DNA of 64,000 bases from Octopus bimaculoides (lineage: Eukaryota): the NCBI RefSeq assembly GCF_001194135.2, contig NC_068981.1, positions 172,137,800-172,201,799 of the forward strand, read 5' to 3'. Positions 6,449 through 55,573 of the stretch are shown one piece after another (within the stretch, counting starts at the first letter, position 1; each line of letters opens with the position of its first letter). The notes under the pieces are model-generated. The model saw nothing but the letters and a program-made list of their open reading frames with translations, had not been told where the DNA came from and did no database searches. A program made the translations under genes and the position numbers.

Positions 6449-7392
6449 GTCATACATTATTCCCTCCCTCTCACATCCATGACACCAACCACGCGCTTCG
6501 GTTTGTTCAGCTCTTTCTCCTTCCTTCCTGTCCCCTCTAAACTTCTCTTCCTCCTCGACATCCAGAGCCTTTACACAGTGATCCCTCACCACGAGGGCTG
6601 CGTGCACTCCAACATTTCCTTGATCTTTGATCCAACCCCCAACCCGACACATCCACACTCGTTTGTCTAGGCGAACTTGTCCTCTCACTCAACTGCTTCT
6701 CGTTCGTTGGTGATTTTTACCAGGAAATCTCGGAAGTGGCCATGGGAACGAGAATGAGCCCCAACTATGCGAACCAGTTCGTTGGCTACGTTGAGGCCCA
6801 AATATTCTCAACTTTCACTGGTCCCACTCCCGAACTATACGGCCGTTATATTGACGACTGTATCGGTGCAACCTCACTCTCCCGTGAACATCTAGACTCC
6901 TCCCCTCTTTTGTCAAATCTTTCCATCCTGCCCTCCACTTCTCCTGCACTACCTTTGACACCTCTGTCTCCTTTCTTGGCATTTCGGTCAGCATTCATCA
7001 CTCCACTCTTACCACCTCTATCCACTACAAACACACAGACTCACACTCATACCTCAACTTCTCCTCCTCCCACCCTAAACATGCCAAGCTTTCCATCCAC
7101 TCTTCCCAATTCCTCTGTCTACGCAGGCTCTGTAGTGACAACCATGACTTTGAGACTCAGTTTCAACTCATGGCTCGCCACTTCATCCTACGTGGATATC
7201 CCCTCACCACTATCCACACCGCCCTTGCCAGAGCACTTCCGTGGACCGTGCATCTGCTCTCTCCCCCACTACATATTCTTTGCTTTCTCTCTTTGTTTCC
7301 TTCTGTGTTCCTTTCTGTAGAAGAGCGTAGGCTCGAAACGTTAAAGACTTTTTCACTTCCCGAGCGTTAAACTAATACATCTGTTTGTTGTC
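6449..7392 (+). mobile_element. Penelope-like element: RT fragment plus 3' pLTR-like tail, 5'-truncated and frameshifted
   Basis: Motifs LDIQSLYTVIPHHEG, AMGTRMSPNYANQFVGYVE, YGRYIDDCIG and RHFILRGYPLTTIHTALARA are typical of Penelope RT. The tail gaagagcgtaggctcgaaacg follows. The element ends in an N gap. Confidence 0.9.
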
Positions 7393-9573: not shown

Positions 9574-9951
9574 GGCACTCCATCGGTTACGACGACGAGG
9601 GTTCACAGTTGATCCGATCAACGGAACAGCCTGCTCGTGAAATTAACGTGCAAGTGGCTGCGCACTCCACAGACACGTGTACTCTTAACATAGTTGTCAG
9701 GGGGATTCAGCGTGACACAGAGTGTGACGAGGCTGGTCCTTTGAAATACAAGTACAACATAACAGAAAGAAAGAGTGAGAGAAATTCGTGGTGAAAGTGT
9801 ACAGCAGGATTCGCCACCCCCACCCTTTCGGAGCCTCGTGGAGCTTTAGGTGTTTTCGCTCAATAAACACTCACAATGCTCGGTCTGGAAATTGAAACCG
9901 CCATCTAACAAACGCGAGTCTGGTGCCCTAACCACTGGGCCATTGCGCCTT
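9574..9951 (-). mobile_element. tRNA-derived SINE, full length (type A)
   Basis: Reverse complement of the 10321-10684 copy, with A- and B-box-like head. Confidence 0.9.
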
Positions 9952-9961
9952 CACAATAGGA

Positions 9962-10255
9962 GCACTCCGTCCCAGCTGATACGATCAGCGGAACAGCTTG
10001 CTCGTGAAATTAACGTGCAAGAGGCTGAGCACTCCACAGACACGTGTACCCTTAACGTAGTTCTCAGGGAGATTCAGCGTGACACAGAGTGTGGCAAGGC
10101 TGGCCCTTTGAAATACAGGTACCACTCATTTTTGTCAGCTGAGTGGACTGGAGCAATGTGAAATAAAGTGTCATGCTAAAGGACACAACACGTCGCGGGG
10201 AATTGAACTCACGATCGTGAGCCGAATGTCCTAACCACTAAGCCACGTGCCTTCA
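9962..10255 (-). mobile_element. tRNA-derived SINE with CORE-like middle and the type A 3' tail
   Basis: Shares the tail cggaacagc.tgctcgtgaaattaacgtgc...tttgaaatacaggtac with its neighbours, then switches to a CORE-like segment (aaagtgtcatgctaaaggacacaac) and a different head. Confidence 0.8.
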
Positions 10256-10320
10256 CTAAAGACATTATTGGTCAATGACTAATATTATTTTCATTTTATC
10301 TGTAAATACAAGAAACGGTG

Positions 10321-10684
10321 GAGGCGCAATGGCCCAGTGGTTAGGGCAGCGGACTCGCGGTCATAGGATCGCGTTTTCGATTCCCAGACCGGGCGTTGTG
10401 AGTGTTTATTGAGCGAAAACACGTAGCTCCGGCAGGGGATGGTGGCGAACCCTGCTGTATTCTTCCACCACAACTTTCTCTCACTCTTACTTCCTGTTTC
10501 TGTTGTACCTGTATTTCAAAGGGCCAGCCTTGTCACACTGTGTCACGCTGAATATCCCCGAGAACTACGTTAAAGGTACACGTGTCTGTGGAGTGCTCAG
10601 CCACTTGCACGTTAATTTCACGAGCAGGCTGTTCCGTTGATCGGATCAATTGAAACCCTCGACGTCGTAAGCGACGGAGTGCCA
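10321..10684 (+). mobile_element. tRNA-derived SINE, full length (type A)
   Basis: Head gaggcgcaatggcccagtggttagggcagcggactcgcgg...tttcgattcccagacc has A- and B-box-like motifs; body matches 9574-9951 in inverted orientation. Confidence 0.9.
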
Positions 10685-24125: not shown

Positions 24126-24699
24126 TATTGAAACTATGATAATTAAAACTATATAGATTGAATAACGCATCCGTAACCATAACAACATAAGTAAGTCGTT
24201 ATTGTTTAAGGCTAGACAAATAGTAAAAACATTTGTAAAGCTTTCCATCTGCTGTCACTAAAGCTATCTTTTAATAACGAACAACTAATATATATTGAGA
24301 TGTCGCGTTAAATATAGATATTTACATAATACAAGTCAACTTTTCGGATATTTTTCTTGCTATTTTCTGTTCTTGTTGTCACCGTCGGTTTTGTCATTAT
24401 GATTGTTGTTGCTGCTATTATAATTGCTGATGATGTTGTTGTTGATACTGTATATTTTGTTGCTTTTTTTATTCCCTTTAAAATTGCAAGCTTAAATCAG
24501 TGCACTTGGAACAAAACAATTTTTCCTTTCTTTTTCTTGTACAGACATCTCGACATATCGTCTTTTGCAATAACATGCTGCGTTTCAACTAAAAATGCGA
24601 TAACAAATGCCACCACAAATGAAAAGAAAAAATAAGTGCACTGGCTTAGTAGAAACCGAATAACAAGCTGGCCTAGATTGCATGCGTGCATACGTAAGT

Positions 24700-24703
24700 A
24701 CAC

Positions 24704-24771
<68 letters not shown>

Positions 24772-24987
24772 GCATACATACATACACACACACACACATA
24801 CATACGTACGTACGTACGTAGGCAGACAGGCAGACAGACAGACAGACACACAGACAGACAGACAGACACACAGACAGACAGACACACAGACAGACACACA
24901 CACAGACAAACAGACAGACAGACACACAGACAGACACACACACAGACAAACAGACAGACAGACACACAGACACACAGACAGACAGAC

Positions 24988-25020
<33 letters not shown>

Positions 25021-25410
25021 CATACATACATACATACATACATACATACATACACACACACACATACATACATACGTACGTACGTACATAGGCAGGCAGG
25101 CAGACAGACAGACAGACACACAGACAGACAGACACACAGACAGACAGACAGACAGATAGATAGATAGATAGATAGATAGATATACATACACACATACATA
25201 CATGCATACATACATACATGCATACACACATACATACATACATACATACATGCATGCATGCATACACACACATACATACATACATACATACATGCATGCA
25301 TGCATACACACACATACATACATGCATGCATACATACATATATGCATGCATACATACATACATACATACATACATACATACATGTTGCATGCGTGCATAC
25401 ATACATGTAT
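24700..25410. repeat. Compound (GATA)/(CATA)/(GACA)/(CA) microsatellite with a higher-order duplicated block
   Basis: The block acacacacatacatacgtacgtacgtac.taggcag.caggcagacagacagacagacacacag occurs at ~24785 and again at ~25055. Confidence 0.9.
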
Positions 25411-25512
25411 TGTTGCTGGTGCATAAAAGAAGAATATACCATATTTTAAACTCTCTTTGTTTCTCTGACCTTTTACAAACAGTAATTGACATTTTCTTCT
25501 TTCTCTTTTCAG

Positions 25513-25543
25513 AATTGGAAAATTTTGTTGTAATTCCACTAAA
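25513..25543 (+). CDS. Candidate 31-nt micro-exon (phase 1 to 2), xLENFVVIPLx
   Basis: Branch-like ttgac, long polypyrimidine tract attttcttctttctcttttcag, donor AAA|gtatga. Confidence 0.45.
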
Positions 25544-25744
25544 GTATGATACTAAAATGAAGTATTTACTAAGATCCCATAATTTTGCTTAATGTTTCCA
25601 TAAAATGAAAATTTATGGGAAATAATTTCAGCAGTGAAACCGCACAAACGCTATGTTTGTTTCTGAGTTACGTTAATCTTTTTTTTCTTTTAACGCTGCA
25701 TCCGAAAATTGTGTTGCTTCAGAGAATACTAGGATATTGTCAGG

Positions 25745-25879
25745 TAGAGAGAAGAAGAAGAAGAAGAAGAAGAAGAAGAAGAAGAAGAAGAAGAAGAAGA
25801 AGAAGAAAAGTAGGAGGATGGGGAGGGTGGAGGTGAGTGGGGATGGAGGGGGGAGAAGAAGAACAACAACAAGAAGAAC

Positions 25880-25913
<34 letters not shown>

Positions 25914-26510
25914 ACAACAACAACAATAACAACAATAACAACAACAAGACGGTGTGAGGAGGAGTGGTGTGGCGGGAGATGTGACGAGAGAGATGTGGCG
26001 GGAGGTGTGGCGGGAGAGGTNNNNNNNNNNNNNNNNNNNNNNNNNNNNNNNNNNNNNNNNNNNNNNNNNNNNNNNNNNNNNNNNNNNNNNNNNNNNNNNN
26101 NNNNNNNNNNNNNNNNNNNNNNNNNNNNNNNNNNNNNNNNNNNNNNNNNNNNNNNNNNNNNNNNNNNNNNNNNNNNNNNNNNNNNNNNNNNNNNNNNNNN
26201 NNNNNNNNNNNNNNNNNNNNNNNNNNNNNNNNNNNNNNNNNNNNAGGAAAAGGAGGAGGAGCAAGCGGAGAAAGAACAAGAGGAGCAAGAGCAGGAGGAG
26301 CAGGAAGAGGAGGGGAGAAGGGGTGGAAGGGAGAAGTGACGTGAAAGGGGGAGATGGAGGGACAGGAAGGGAGGGAGAGGGAGATGTAGAATGGAGGAGA
26401 AGAGAGGGGATGGTAGGGAGGGAAGGAGGGGAAGGAGTAAGAAAAGGAGGAGGGGGGGAGAAGAAGATTTTGGTTAGAAGAAAGAAAGAAAGAAAGAAAA
26501 AAAGACGAAG
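25745..26510. repeat. (GAA)n plus degenerate polypurine tract, interrupted by a gap
   Basis: Seen directly. Confidence 0.9.
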
Positions 26511-27303
26511 TAATGTTAACGTATGGACAACATAATTTGTCAGTTAAAACGAATTTAACAAGATAGACTCTTACAATTCTTTTCAGGATGTCAAGAAGGG
26601 TGAAGCCTGCATCATGATAGAAACTATTGATTTCCTTCTTTGATATAAAACAACAAATTTACAAGAGTAGGAAATGAGTTTGTACGCCAGATTGTATTCC
26701 AGTAAGATACACGTAAGGTAAGGGGAAATGAGTTTGTTGTGATCGGGAAGTGAAACGTGATCGTAAGCCCAATAGATAAGACTTGCATAGTTCCACCCTA
26801 GGTAGAGAAGTATTTTAATTCATCACTGCACGCTAACGAAACCCTTATTGGTTTAATTTAAGTTGACATACACACCCGTACACACAGACACGGAGACACG
26901 AGCACGCACTCATACATATGTGTGTATGTGTGTTAGTGTATAAGGTTCTCCGTTGATTTCGTTAGTCGCTCAATCAAGTGAATTATGTTAAATTCAGTGG
27001 GTGAGTATTCCAGAGATATATGTAACTTTAACGCAATTCTCAGGCAGAATCAATGTGATATGGTATGTGACTAGACTGTGGCTTAGGATTACAGGTACAA
27101 TCCATCCGACAAGTTTCTGTACAGCTTTAGTCCACCCAGTTTCACTTACAAGATATGGGTCAACCCGAGGTTATAGAAGAGACCATTTGCCCGGGTCCTC
27201 GTGGTGATTCCAAAGCACACTTCTTAATCATTCGACCATACTATACCTATGTGTGTGTGCGCGCGTGTGTATATATGTATGTATATCTATAGAAATGTGT
27301 GTG

Positions 27304-33050: not shown

Positions 33051-34168
33051 CTGTCTGTCCGCCTGTCTGTTTATCTGTTTATCAATCTGCCTCGCTAGCT
33101 ATCCATCTATCTCTACTTATCTAGCTTTTTTATCTATTTATGTCTCATCTTTTATTCTTGGACATCTTGTACTGTAATTTTGAAATTTAAGACCCGTTAT
33201 TCTACACAATAAAGCTGACTAAACTGTTGCATAGCATGTTCTCACCACTATTTGTTATTTAGCATCCGTATCAGCTCGAGTCGAACAAATTCGTGATCAC
33301 TGGTGTTCCAGTCGTGACTATCCAGCGTTTTATTCATACGAAATGTAAATGGGACTGCATTACATAACGTATCTTTCGTGTTCATGCTTAATTTCAGGTT
33401 AACACTGACTGTGTAGACTTATCATCAAAGACTTTCAGCATTTCGTCCTTCTCTCAGGCATTTTCTGTTTAGGACTCCATTATTCAAAACTGCCAGGTTG
33501 TGATTTGGGGATTTTTTTTTTGTTGTTATTTCCTGTAAGTCAAGTGACAATGTAAATGTTCCCTCGTTGACTCATTATATCCATAGGTTTGTTTATTTCA
33601 AATACCTCCATGTTTGATTTTTGCTTTTTATTTTTATTTTATTTTATTTTATTCATTTTTTTTTTTTTTTAATGATGAAAGAAACAGCAGCAATAGCAAA
33701 GGGAGTTATTAAGTTACTTAGCTACAACTTTTGGATAATTTTTATACATAATAAACCAGTCTGTGTATCAAACTTAATGCAGACATATCATTGAAAGTCG
33801 AATTAACTGTCCTGGAATAGTATCTCTTACAGATGTACAGTGTTAAAAAAACATAGAAAAATATATCAGTAATTGACAAAAATCTTCCAGCAGCTGTGGT
33901 GGCTTTACTAATTACGAATTTCTACCTCTTTGAGCTTCGTCAATAGCAAGTATCCATTGACAGCAGCATGCTAAGGCAAAATCTGTTGGCTAATTACAGC
34001 ATCAGTAGTTTTTCGGTCACTGTTTTACTATATCATTAAAGGTGACTTTTATTTTAGCAAGCAGTTACCAGTGGATAATTGCTACTGACGAAGTGAAAGA
34101 TGCGGAAATACGCATCTAGCAATACCACCGCCGCTGCTGGACGTCTTTCGTAAGTTACTGATATATAT

Positions 34169-35079
34169 ATTACTCTTTTACTTGTTTCAGTCATTTGAAT
34201 GCGGCCATGCTAGAATACTACCTTAAAGGGTTTTAGTCGAAGCAATCGACCCTAGGATTTATTCTTTCTAAGCCAAGTACTTATTCAATCGGTCACTTTT
34301 TGTCAAACCGCTAATTTACGGGGACGTAAACACACCAGCATCGGTTGTCAAGCAGTGGAGGTGGGAACAGACGCAGACACAAAGACACACTCACANNNNN
34401 NNNNNNNNNNNNNNNNNNNNNNNNNNNNNNNNNNNNNNNNNNNNNNNNNNNNNNNNNNNNNNNNNNNNNNNNNNNNNNNNNNNNNNNNNNNNNNNNNNNN
34501 NNNNNNNNNNNNNNNNNNNNNNNNNNNNNNNNNNNNNNNNNNNNNNNNNNNNNNNNNNNNNNNNNNNNNTATATGTATATATATGTATATATATATATAA
34601 AGTGTAGTATATTGCCACTTAAGTGTGGCTGACCCCTAGGGGTGGATGTTACTGTTGCTTTTAGCCCCAGGAGGACATCTCCTCCAGCTGGCTTATCGAC
34701 ACACGACTGTGTCCTGTTTGCCAAGGGTAGTTATCCCTCTCACCAACGTTCGTGCTGCAGATGTTGGTGAGAGGGATAACTACCCTTGGCAAACAGGACA
34801 CAGTCGTGTGTCGATAAGCCAGCTGGAGGAGATGTCCTCCTGGGGCTAAAAGCAACAGTAACATCCACCCCTAGGGGTCAGCCACACTTAAGTGGCAATA
34901 TACTACACTTTATATATATATATACACATGTATATATGCAGATTCCGTCTACCAAATCCACTCACAAGGCTTTGGTCGGCACGGGGCTATGGTAGAAGGC
35001 ACTTGTCCACGGTGCCACGCAGTGGGACTGAACCTAGAACCATGTGGTTAGGAAGCAAGCTTCTTACCACACAGTCACG
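34169..35079 (-). mobile_element. Bipartite CORE-like SINE (type C) hosting the foldback element in its internal microsatellite
   Basis: 3' half at 34169-34395, 5' half at 34940-35079. Confidence 0.85.
34600..34910. mobile_element. 311-bp perfect foldback element in (TA)n
   Basis: Arms 34600-34747 and 34763-34910 are exact reverse complements (148 bp). Loop gttcgtgctgcagat; TA on both sides. Confidence 0.92.
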
Positions 35080-35095
35080 ATATATATACATGTGT

Positions 35096-35172
<77 letters not shown>

Positions 35173-35444
35173 TGTATGTGTTTAACACTGTACATCTGTA
35201 AAAGATACCCTCTCAAGACGAATATGACAGTTAATTAGGCTTTCAATGATATGCCTGCCTTAAGTATGACACAAATTGCTATTTCAAATTAATGCTGCTT
35301 CTGCCGCACGTAACGAATTAATACTTGTAAAGTTATGCCATTGGAAAGAATGTTATCAAAATATGATATAGGAATGTATTTTTATATGTAGCAAAATCAT
35401 ACATGAGGTTACTTAGAACAAAATAGTGCTTTCAAATTTTTGGC

Positions 35445-55194: not shown

Positions 55195-55573
55195 TGTAAA
55201 TGTTTGTGTGTCTGTGTTTGCCCCCCCCCCCCCNNNNNNNNNNNNNNNNNNNNNNNNNNNNNNNNNNNNNNNNNNNNNNNNNNNNNNNNNNNNNNNNNNN
55301 NNNNNNNNNNNNNNNNNNNNNNNNNNNNNNNNNNNNNNNNNNNNNNNNNNNNNNNNNNNNNNNNNNNNNNNNNNNNNNNNNNNNNNNNNNNNNNNNNNNN
55401 NNNNNNCCGATGGTGGTGTCCCCGTAACTTAGCGGTTCGGCAAAAGAGAACGATAGAATAAGTACCAGGCTTCCAAAGAATAAGTCCTGGGGTCGATTTG
55501 CTCGACTAAAAGGCGGTGCTCCAGCATGGCCGCAGTCAAATGACTGAAACAAGTAAAAGAGAATAAAAGAGAA
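54970..55573 (+). mobile_element. Bipartite CORE-like SINE (type C), young copy with a gap in its microsatellite
   Basis: Head ggcgctggagtggctgtgtggtaagtagcttgc; CORE-like caccttgggcaagtgtc; tail ...tgactgaaacaagtaaaagag. Confidence 0.9.

What the first reader, a model, noticed from the sequence alone, without database searches (positions are those of the whole stretch)
34600..34910. Perfect 148-bp-arm foldback whose arms are chains of small hairpins, inserted in the (TA)n core of a SINE
Seen: no mismatches between the arms, a 15-nt loop and TA flanks. Each arm contains nested mini inverted repeats: GCCAC/GTGGC around TTAAGT (34614-34629), CCCCTAGGGG (34633-34642), GGAGGA/TCCTCC (34670-34685), CCAGCTGG, GACAC/GTGTC (34698-34713) and AGGG/CCCT (34724-34738). 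It is GC-rich in an AT-rich background. The termini (AAGTGTAG...CTACACTT) do not match a superfamily I recognise. Inference: a very young or homogenised microsatellite-targeting foldback MITE, analogous to (TA)n-targeting plant MITEs such as rice Micron. It could extrude a cruciform, fold two ways as ssDNA/RNA, and give perfect dsRNA for ADAR or Dicer.
Basis: partly seen in the sequence, partly recalled or inferred. Interest (0 to 1): 0.72.

Follow-up and report, generated by a model that had tools for sequence, protein, structure and literature searches.

The report
Perfect hairpin insertion in octopod SINE
A 311-base stretch that is an exact mirror-image hairpin sits inside the TA-repeat core of a common octopod repeat; it is most likely a young foldback-type mobile element, but with one copy seen and an assembly gap 30 bases away its reality and mobility remain unproven.

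Summary
Window 34600-34747 and 34763-34910 are exact reverse complements (148 nt, 0 mismatches) around an asymmetric 15-nt loop. The element is 51% GC in a 36.5% GC window. It splits a SINE-like repeat at its (CA)n(TA)n core, which is 30-60 nt and uninterrupted in four paralogues in the window and in one copy from another sample. The small hairpins inside each arm exceed chance (6 perfect stems of at least 5 bp versus 1.2 expected, P about 0.0005). They are energetically trivial beside the full hairpin (about -49 versus -332 kcal/mol as RNA).

An insertion of foreign sequence into the TA core is shown. "MITE family" and "microsatellite-targeting" are not: I found no second copy in the window or in any collection I could reach, none of which holds octopod genomes. 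The TA flanks hide any target-site duplication.

An assembly or library artefact is not excluded, because an N gap lies 30 nt to the left and the mirror symmetry runs 16 nt into the flanks. The asymmetric non-adaptor loop and two different flank variants argue against a simple fold-back artefact.

Verdict: probably an ordinary, young foldback/MITE-like insertion. Low to moderate interest.

The parts
34160..34395 (-). 3' (tail) half of the host SINE-like repeat, ending in the CA-rich part of its core at the gap edge
   Evidence: blastn finds 70-83% identical copies elsewhere in the window. Alignment A1 with four paralogues. 79% identity to the ENA contig L002.
34396..34569 (.). Assembly gap of 174 N. 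It hides the junction between the CA-rich core and the left TA flank.
34570..34599 (.). Left TA-rich flank, (TATATGTATA)3. Its inner 16 nt mirror the right flank.
   Evidence: TRF period 10, 95% matches; mismatch map
34600..34747 (+). Left arm of the foldback, 148 nt, 50.7% GC. It carries small hairpins at 34614-34629, 34632-34643, 34669-34685 and 34698-34713, plus the weaker CCAGCTGG at 34684-34691 and AGGG/CCCT at 34724-34738. It also has a T4 run at 34659-34662.
34748..34762 (+). Asymmetric 15-nt loop GTTCGTGCTGCAGAT, containing CTGCAG
34763..34910 (+). Right arm, the exact reverse complement of the left arm
34911..34939 (.). Right TA-rich flank, (TA)7 followed by CACATGTATATATGC. This is a different microsatellite variant from the left flank.
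34940..35085 (-). 5' (head) half of the same SINE-like repeat. It lacks about 14 nt (CGACGGGCTTCTTT) next to the core compared with paralogues.
   Evidence: 77-89% identity to other window copies; alignment A1; 87% identity to a locus of Argonauta hians

Best explanation
This is a real, evolutionarily young, non-autonomous foldback (MITE-like) DNA element of 311 bp. It consists almost entirely of two perfect 148-bp terminal inverted repeats around a 15-nt spacer. It inserted into the (TA)n tract in the core of an older octopod SINE copy.

Inferred mechanism: a transposase supplied in trans recognises the identical ends, excises the element and reintegrates it at a TA-containing target. A TA duplication (Tc1/mariner type) or a 9-10-bp (TA)n duplication (Mutator type) would both be invisible in these flanks. 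The short internal palindromes would be protein-binding or structure-forming subterminal motifs.

The element itself has no shown cellular function. As by-products it is a potential cruciform or fragile site, and, if read through by Pol II, a source of perfect 148-bp dsRNA.

Shown here: the perfect inverted repeat, the insertion relative to paralogous empty cores, and the non-coding, non-contaminant nature of the sequence. Inferred: mobility, superfamily, target preference, and any RNA or chromatin effect.
For: The arms are exact and the loop asymmetric. The element has sharp boundaries where the TA periodicity stops. The two SINE halves on either side are collinear and in the same orientation. 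Four paralogues in the window and one copy in an independent ENA contig carry only 30-60 nt of uninterrupted (CA)n(TA)n at that point. The insert is foreign in composition, 51% against 36.5% GC. It matches nothing in phage, plasmid or E. coli records, so it is not vector or PhiX contamination. It has no protein similarity in any frame. The host SINE copy is 12-30% diverged from its paralogues, whereas the arms have 0 differences, so the insert is much younger than its host repeat. The left and right flanks are different microsatellite variants, (TATATGTATA)3 against (TA)7CACATG..., so two distinct TA-to-arm junctions exist in the data, as a true two-armed insertion predicts. The local hairpin motifs exceed chance. 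Microsatellite-flanked MITEs with long TIRs are a documented kind (PMC5907723, PMC8449440), and Mutator/Foldback elements exist in animals (PMC3169594).
Against: Only one copy is known. There is none elsewhere in the 64-kb window and none in any collection I could scan, although those collections hold no octopod genomes. No target-site duplication can be read. The termini match no superfamily I can test. An N gap lies 30 nt from the left arm. Both flanks carry exactly (TA)7 plus a complementary G/C and T/A, a symmetry that an insertion does not predict but a fold-back duplication does. Perfect palindromes of this size are unstable in vivo and are also a known form of assembly or library error.
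Confidence: 0.5

Rival explanations
1. Assembly or library artefact. The genome holds a foreign insert with only one arm (arm', plus the loop sequence continuing into something else). The left 178 nt of the contig (34570-34747) were generated by a fold-back during contig extension or gap filling, or from chimeric snap-back fragments.
For: The contig starts only 30 nt left of the palindrome, right after an N gap. The mirror symmetry extends 16 nt beyond the element into the flank, including one G:C and one T:A position outside the pure TA run. (TA)n is self-complementary, so a fold-back automatically produces 'TA flanks on both sides'. Gaps in this assembly commonly sit in SINE cores and microsatellites, which shows that the assembler struggles exactly here.
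Against: The loop is 15 nt and asymmetric, so the turn is not a palindromic k-mer. It must be spelled out in the sequenced molecules. From memory, it resembles no common adaptor or junction sequence, and it has no hit in plasmid, phage or E. coli records. The outer 14 nt of the left flank differ from the reverse complement of the right flank at 5 positions and have their own period-10 structure. A pure fold-back would not produce that; it would need a second junction, allele or locus. No other contig end in the window shows such a palindrome. The split SINE still requires a real insertion of roughly 0.3-0.5 kb here.
Confidence: 0.3
2. A real palindrome that is not a transposon. A break in the fragile (TA)n tract was repaired by copying about 160 nt from elsewhere in the genome. 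Snap-back (hairpin-primed) synthesis or template switching then produced a one-off inverted duplication that includes a little of the TA flank.
For: The symmetry includes 16 nt of flank, with equal (TA)7 on both sides. A short asymmetric spacer is typical of snap-back priming. Only a single copy is known. A ~14-nt deletion lies in the SINE about 30 nt away, which hints at local repair.
Against: I found no microhomology at the turn that would prime a snap-back (reading). The boundaries coincide exactly with the end of TA periodicity on both sides, as expected for an element. The excess of internal palindromic motifs is not predicted for a random genomic donor.
Confidence: 0.15
3. A functional hairpin-RNA or miRNA-like gene. 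This does not exclude a transposon origin.
For: The element would form a perfect long hairpin. There are sub-threshold structural matches to long-hairpin miRNA precursor families in Rfam, with E-values from 0.003 down to about 1e-15.
Against: All the Rfam matches are far below their gathering scores (for example 74.6 against 171 bits) and reflect hairpin shape only. A 148-bp perfect stem is unlike animal pre-miRNAs. A T4 run in the first-transcribed arm would stop Pol III coming from the SINE head. I have no conservation or expression evidence.
Confidence: 0.05

Closest known systems
Microsatellite-targeting Mutator-derived MITEs of plants (rice Micron/rSaTar2, guayule SaTars, pineapple mt-MITEs, Medicago MuTAnT)
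   Same: It is a small non-coding element defined by terminal inverted repeats, flanked on both sides by a dinucleotide (TA)n microsatellite with no readable target-site duplication (PMC5907723, PMC8449440).
   Different: Those are families of hundreds to thousands of copies whose TIRs are traceable to autonomous Mutator-like elements. Here one copy is known, in an animal, no autonomous partner is known, and the arms make up 95% of the element.
Foldback elements (Drosophila FB; Tm1 Mutator/Foldback family of root-knot nematodes)
   Same: These are animal elements consisting largely of long inverted repeats able to form extensive hairpins. Some members are MITE-like and non-coding (PMC3169594).
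   Different: FB and Tm1 TIRs are composite, variable in length and built from subrepeats, and Tm1 has 9-bp target-site duplications. Here the arms contain no tandem subrepeats but a chain of short palindromes, and the duplication is unreadable.
Stowaway-like / Tc1-mariner MITEs
   Same: The flanks are compatible with a TA target. The element is small and forms a hairpin.
   Different: Those have short TIRs (tens of bp) with family-specific consensus ends. The ends here, AAGTGTAG...CTACACTT, were not matched to any such consensus, and I had no library to test them against.
Palindromic fold-back errors at contig ends in draft assemblies
   Same: It is a perfect inverted duplication that starts a contig next to a gap, in low-complexity sequence.
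   Different: The loop is an asymmetric 15-nt non-adaptor sequence, and the outer flank is not the reverse complement of the other side.

Membership tests
MITE (generic) | Terminal inverted repeats at both ends | tested here: met
   148-nt arms, 100% complementary
MITE (generic) | Small and non-coding | tested here: met
   311 bp. It holds only palindrome-spanning ORFs of 67 aa or less. No protein similarity in any frame.
MITE (generic) | Target-site duplication flanking the TIRs | tested here: inconclusive
   Both flanks are (TA)7, so any duplication made of TA units (2-14 bp) fits
MITE (generic) | Multi-copy family with conserved ends at unrelated loci | not testable with these tools
   There is no second copy in 64 kb. 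The collections that can be scanned hold no octopod genomes. The protein route is nearly blind to octopod repeats, as the control shows: a SINE present 6 or more times in the window gave only 2 hits.
MITE (generic) | Insertion shown by an empty (paralogous or orthologous) site | tested here: met
   Four paralogous SINE copies and one ENA contig have an uninterrupted 30-60-nt core at this point. The orthologous empty site was not available.
Microsatellite-targeting MULE-derived MITEs (Micron/SaTar/mt-MITE) | Dinucleotide microsatellite on both sides of the element | tested here: met
   TA-rich flanks at 34570-34599 and 34911-34939. This is a single instance only.
Microsatellite-targeting MULE-derived MITEs (Micron/SaTar/mt-MITE) | Most family members lie in microsatellites (target preference) | not testable with these tools
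   No other copies are available
Microsatellite-targeting MULE-derived MITEs (Micron/SaTar/mt-MITE) | TIRs similar to those of an autonomous Mutator-like element | not testable with these tools
   No octopod transposon library or genome was reachable, and none lies in the window
Foldback (FB-like) elements | Long inverted repeats make up most of the element | tested here: met
   296 of 311 bp are arms
Foldback (FB-like) elements | Arms built from tandem subrepeats, variable in length | tested here: not met
   TRF finds no tandem array inside 34600-34910 apart from one weak period-20 row that straddles the right boundary into the TA flank (34898-34937, 2 copies). The arms carry dispersed short palindromes instead.
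Helitron | 5'-TC ... CTRR-3' ends with a 3' subterminal hairpin, inserted between A and T | tested here: not met
   The ends are AAGTGTAG ... CTACACTT
Rfam miRNA precursor families (MIR6224, MIR5512, MIR9471, MIR6234 and others) | Score at or above the family's gathering threshold | tested here: not met
   The best match scores 74.6 bits against a threshold of 171. There are no matches at gathering level.
Contig-end fold-back artefact | The palindrome runs to the contig end, with the flank an exact reverse complement of the other side | tested here: not met
   5 mismatches in the outermost 14 nt, and the left flank has its own period-10 structure
Contig-end fold-back artefact | Only one arm present in the raw or long reads | not testable with these tools
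   No read data were available

The most novel reading that the evidence does not exclude
This is one member of a recently active, (TA)n-microsatellite-targeting foldback transposon family in an octopod. That would be the first animal counterpart of the plant Micron/SaTar Mutator-derived MITEs. It would home to the TA cores of the hugely abundant octopod SINEs and seed the genome with perfect ~150-bp dsRNA hairpins that could feed the cephalopod ADAR/RNAi machinery.
Probability: 0.1. Interest if true: 0.55.

Novelty: new member of a known kind. Interest (0 to 1): 0.25.

Why it matters
If real, it marks very recent DNA-transposon activity in an octopod genome. It also gives a concrete, testable locus for three questions. 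Do animal MITEs target microsatellites, here the TA cores supplied in vast numbers by SINEs? Do perfect long palindromes persist in cephalopod germlines? Do such hairpins contribute dsRNA substrates in a lineage famous for RNA editing? If it is an artefact, it is a useful warning that perfect palindromes beside gaps in short-read cephalopod assemblies should not be fed into repeat or dsRNA catalogues. Either way, nothing here departs from known kinds of element or error.

Tried and rejected
1. Contamination or vector: arm plus loop against phage, plasmid and E. coli records gave no match. Rejected.

2. Known RNA: Rfam at gathering level and ARAGORN found nothing. The permissive scan gave only shape-driven, sub-threshold miRNA-precursor matches. 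Rejected as membership.

3. Coding fragment, or copies visible in protein space: a concatenated six-frame translation of the arm against 5.8 billion proteins gave no hit. The control with SINE-derived ORFs returned only 2 proteins. The negative therefore says 'not a recognisable coding fragment' but nothing about copy number.

4. Exact look-ups of the two 67-aa palindrome-spanning ORFs and of a 207-aa window ORF in public assemblies: not on record.

5. Exact 25-32-mers of the arm in the viral, JGI metagenome and prokaryote genome collections: 0 matches. This was expected for a eukaryotic element and exhausted those caps.

6. Longer element with the same ends in the window: none.

7. Route to the orthologous locus in another assembly through a host gene: no Pfam-recognisable exon among the long ORFs. 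Abandoned.

8. I left the third protein search unused. Seven remaining look-ups would have sampled only about 0.2 Mb of octopod DNA, too little to bound the copy number.

9. 'Folds two ways': the arm-local folds (-48 to -51 kcal/mol) are negligible beside the full hairpin (-332 kcal/mol). I rejected this as an equilibrium alternative; at most it has a kinetic role.

Full report
**1. The observation**

Reading the sequence and comparing the arms base by base confirms that 34600-34747 and 34763-34910 are exact reverse complements (148 nt, 0 mismatches). They are separated by the 15-nt loop GTTCGTGCTGCAGAT. The repeat finder reports the same pair as 175-nt arms at 98%, because the symmetry continues into the flanks. 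The continuation is (TA)7, then a G:C and a T:A, so each side is perfect for 164 nt. It then breaks, with 5 mismatches in the remaining 14 nt before the N gap at 34396-34569. This is the only genuine long palindrome in the window; the longer pairs are runs of N matched against N.

The arm is 50.7% GC against 36.5% for the window. As a single strand the element folds into one uninterrupted hairpin: -332 kcal/mol as RNA and -208 kcal/mol as DNA, with z-scores of about -45.

**2. The small hairpins**

Counting perfect stems of at least 5 bp with loops of 8 nt or less gives 6, at four sites: 34614-34629, 34632-34643, 34669-34685 and 34698-34713. Dinucleotide shuffles give 1.17 +/- 1.06 (P about 0.0005). 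Only 0.6% of window chunks with GC above 0.45 reach that number. The enrichment is therefore real.

It does not amount to a competing fold. An arm alone reaches -48 to -51 kcal/mol as RNA, only 1.7-2.3 sd better than shuffles, against -332 kcal/mol for the full hairpin. Palindromic hexamers are not enriched (3 observed, 1.8 expected).

**3. Context**

The flanks are two halves of one interspersed repeat lying on the minus strand. Its tail is at 34160-34395 and its head at 34940-35085. The window holds at least five further copies at 70-89% identity.

Aligned, the paralogues show tail, then (CA)n(TA)n of 30-60 nt, then TACGACGGGCTTCTTTCAGTTTCCGTCTACC and the head. An independent 538-nt ENA contig (L002) shows the same uninterrupted core. 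The head is also found in the genome of the octopod Argonauta hians, so the host is an octopod.

In our copy the tail and head are collinear and in the same orientation but about 545 nt apart: 174 N, 30 nt of TA, the 311-nt foldback, and 29 nt of TA. Whatever the truth about the second arm, foreign sequence has entered the TA part of this SINE core. Our copy also lacks about 14 nt (CGACGGGCTTCTTT) just right of the core.

**4. What the insert is not**

- It is not vector, PhiX or E. coli contamination.
- It matches no Rfam family at gathering level and is not a tRNA.
- The permissive Rfam scan returns only long-hairpin miRNA precursor models, far below threshold (for example 74.6 against 171 bits). 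These are shape matches, not homology.
- A concatenation of all open frames of the arm finds no protein among 5.8 billion, so it is not a recognisable coding fragment.

**5. Is it a repeated family?**

This is the test that matters for 'MITE', and I could not run it.

- There is no other copy, not even of the 19-nt terminus with 3 mismatches allowed, in the 64 kb.
- The collections that can be scanned are viral, metagenomic or prokaryotic, and gave no exact match.
- I tried to reach octopod DNA through protein space. As a control I searched SINE-derived ORFs. That repeat occurs six or more times in this window alone, yet it returned only two proteins. The route is therefore nearly blind to octopod non-coding repeats, and the negative result says nothing about copy number.
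- Exact-product look-ups of window ORFs were not on record.

**6. Real or artefact?**

For an artefact:
- The contig begins 30 nt left of the palindrome, straight after a gap.
- (TA)n is self-complementary, so any fold-back would give TA on both sides.
- The symmetry includes exactly (TA)7 plus two further complementary positions on each side. An insertion does not predict this.

Against a simple artefact:
- The turn is a 15-nt asymmetric sequence rather than a self-complementary k-mer. Sequenced molecules must therefore have contained arm, loop and arm' at least at k-mer scale.
- From my own knowledge, the loop is not a common adaptor or junction sequence, and it has no hit in plasmid, phage or E. 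coli records.
- The left flank is (TATATGTATA)3, whereas the reverse complement of the right flank would read ...ATACATGTG(TA)7. Two different TA-to-arm junctions therefore exist in the data. That requires a true two-armed insert, a second copy elsewhere in a TA tract, or an allelic microsatellite difference.

My weights are: real mobile-element insertion 0.50; artefact with one real arm 0.30; real but one-off fold-back repair product 0.15; functional hairpin-RNA gene 0.05.

**7. How it most likely works**

The best-supported reading is a young, non-autonomous foldback or MITE-like DNA element. Its identical ends would be bound by a transposase supplied in trans, and it integrated at a TA-containing target.

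Zero differences over 148 nt, inside a SINE copy that is 12-30% diverged from its paralogues, means the insertion is much younger than its host repeat. Alternatively, the arms are kept identical by intramolecular conversion. Both a TA duplication (Tc1/mariner type) and a 9-10-bp (TA)n duplication (Mutator type) would be hidden in these flanks.

The short palindromes would be subterminal binding or structural motifs. That is inference only.

As for consequences, cruciform extrusion is possible, though a 15-nt spacer and a GC-moderate centre slow it (established knowledge of inverted-repeat extrusion).

Perfect dsRNA would require Pol II read-through. A Pol III transcript starting at the SINE head on the minus strand meets a T4 run (GCTTTTAGC) about 60 nt into the first arm. 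By the general rule that T runs terminate Pol III, it would probably stop there, before the hairpin is complete. I have no expression, editing or small-RNA data.

**8. Comparison with known kinds**

The closest in behaviour are the plant microsatellite-targeting Mutator-derived MITEs: Micron/rSaTar2, the SaTars, pineapple mt-MITEs and MuTAnT (PMC5907723, PMC8449440). These are flanked by dinucleotide repeats on both sides without a readable duplication.

The closest in architecture among animals are Foldback-type elements such as Tm1 of root-knot nematodes (PMC3169594). FB-type arms, however, are built from subrepeats, and these arms are not.

A recent curated annotation of Octopus vulgaris lists MITE, Tc1-Mariner, hAT, piggyBac and Mutator families among recently active elements (PMC13282606), so a young MITE in an octopod is unsurprising. 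Membership in any named family is untested, because the defining multi-copy and TIR-homology features need a genome that I could not reach.

**9. Verdict**

The object is most likely an ordinary new member of a known kind, with a substantial chance that the second arm is an assembly product. Interest is 0.25. The most novel reading still open is an animal (TA)n-targeting foldback family that exploits SINE cores. I give that about 0.1.

Noticed in passing
window 9606-9724 and 9977-10091 (+) versus 10534-10652 (-); tRNA-like head near 10320-10400: A second interspersed repeat family occurs as an inverted pair, 92-93% complementary over 115-119 nt and 440-810 nt apart. This is an ordinary inverted-SINE arrangement that could itself give imperfect dsRNA.
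   Followed up: partly
window 34937-34941: The host SINE copy lacks about 14 nt (CGACGGGCTTCTTT) immediately right of its core compared with four paralogues and with L002. Whether this relates to the insertion event is unknown.
   Followed up: partly
window 34396-34569 and 55234-55406: Assembly gaps fall inside SINE copies at or next to their microsatellite cores. The assembler fails systematically in this repeat, which bears on trust in neighbouring sequence.
   Followed up: partly
window 6736-7320 (+): A 194-aa ORF carries a reverse-transcriptase-like YIDD motif (…GRYIDDCIG…) but has no Pfam hit at E<=0.01. It is probably a decayed retroelement fragment ending at a gap.
   Followed up: partly
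window 24500-25540: A roughly 1-kb compound microsatellite or minisatellite produces pseudo-ORFs of 285-331 aa made of repeated CMYV/LSIY motifs.
   Followed up: no
window 25737-26535: Purine-rich low-complexity sequence flanks a 224-N gap and gives K/R/E/G-rich pseudo-ORFs of about 200 aa.
   Followed up: no
L002 (ENA ERZ1023377, NODE_107229, 538 nt), 92-401: A metagenome assembly contig carries a near-full copy of the same octopod SINE, 75-79% identical over the tail and full length and 92% over a 49-nt head segment. That sample therefore contains octopod host DNA.
   Followed up: partly
window 35091-35181: A (TG)45 microsatellite directly abuts the 5' end of the host SINE head.
   Followed up: no
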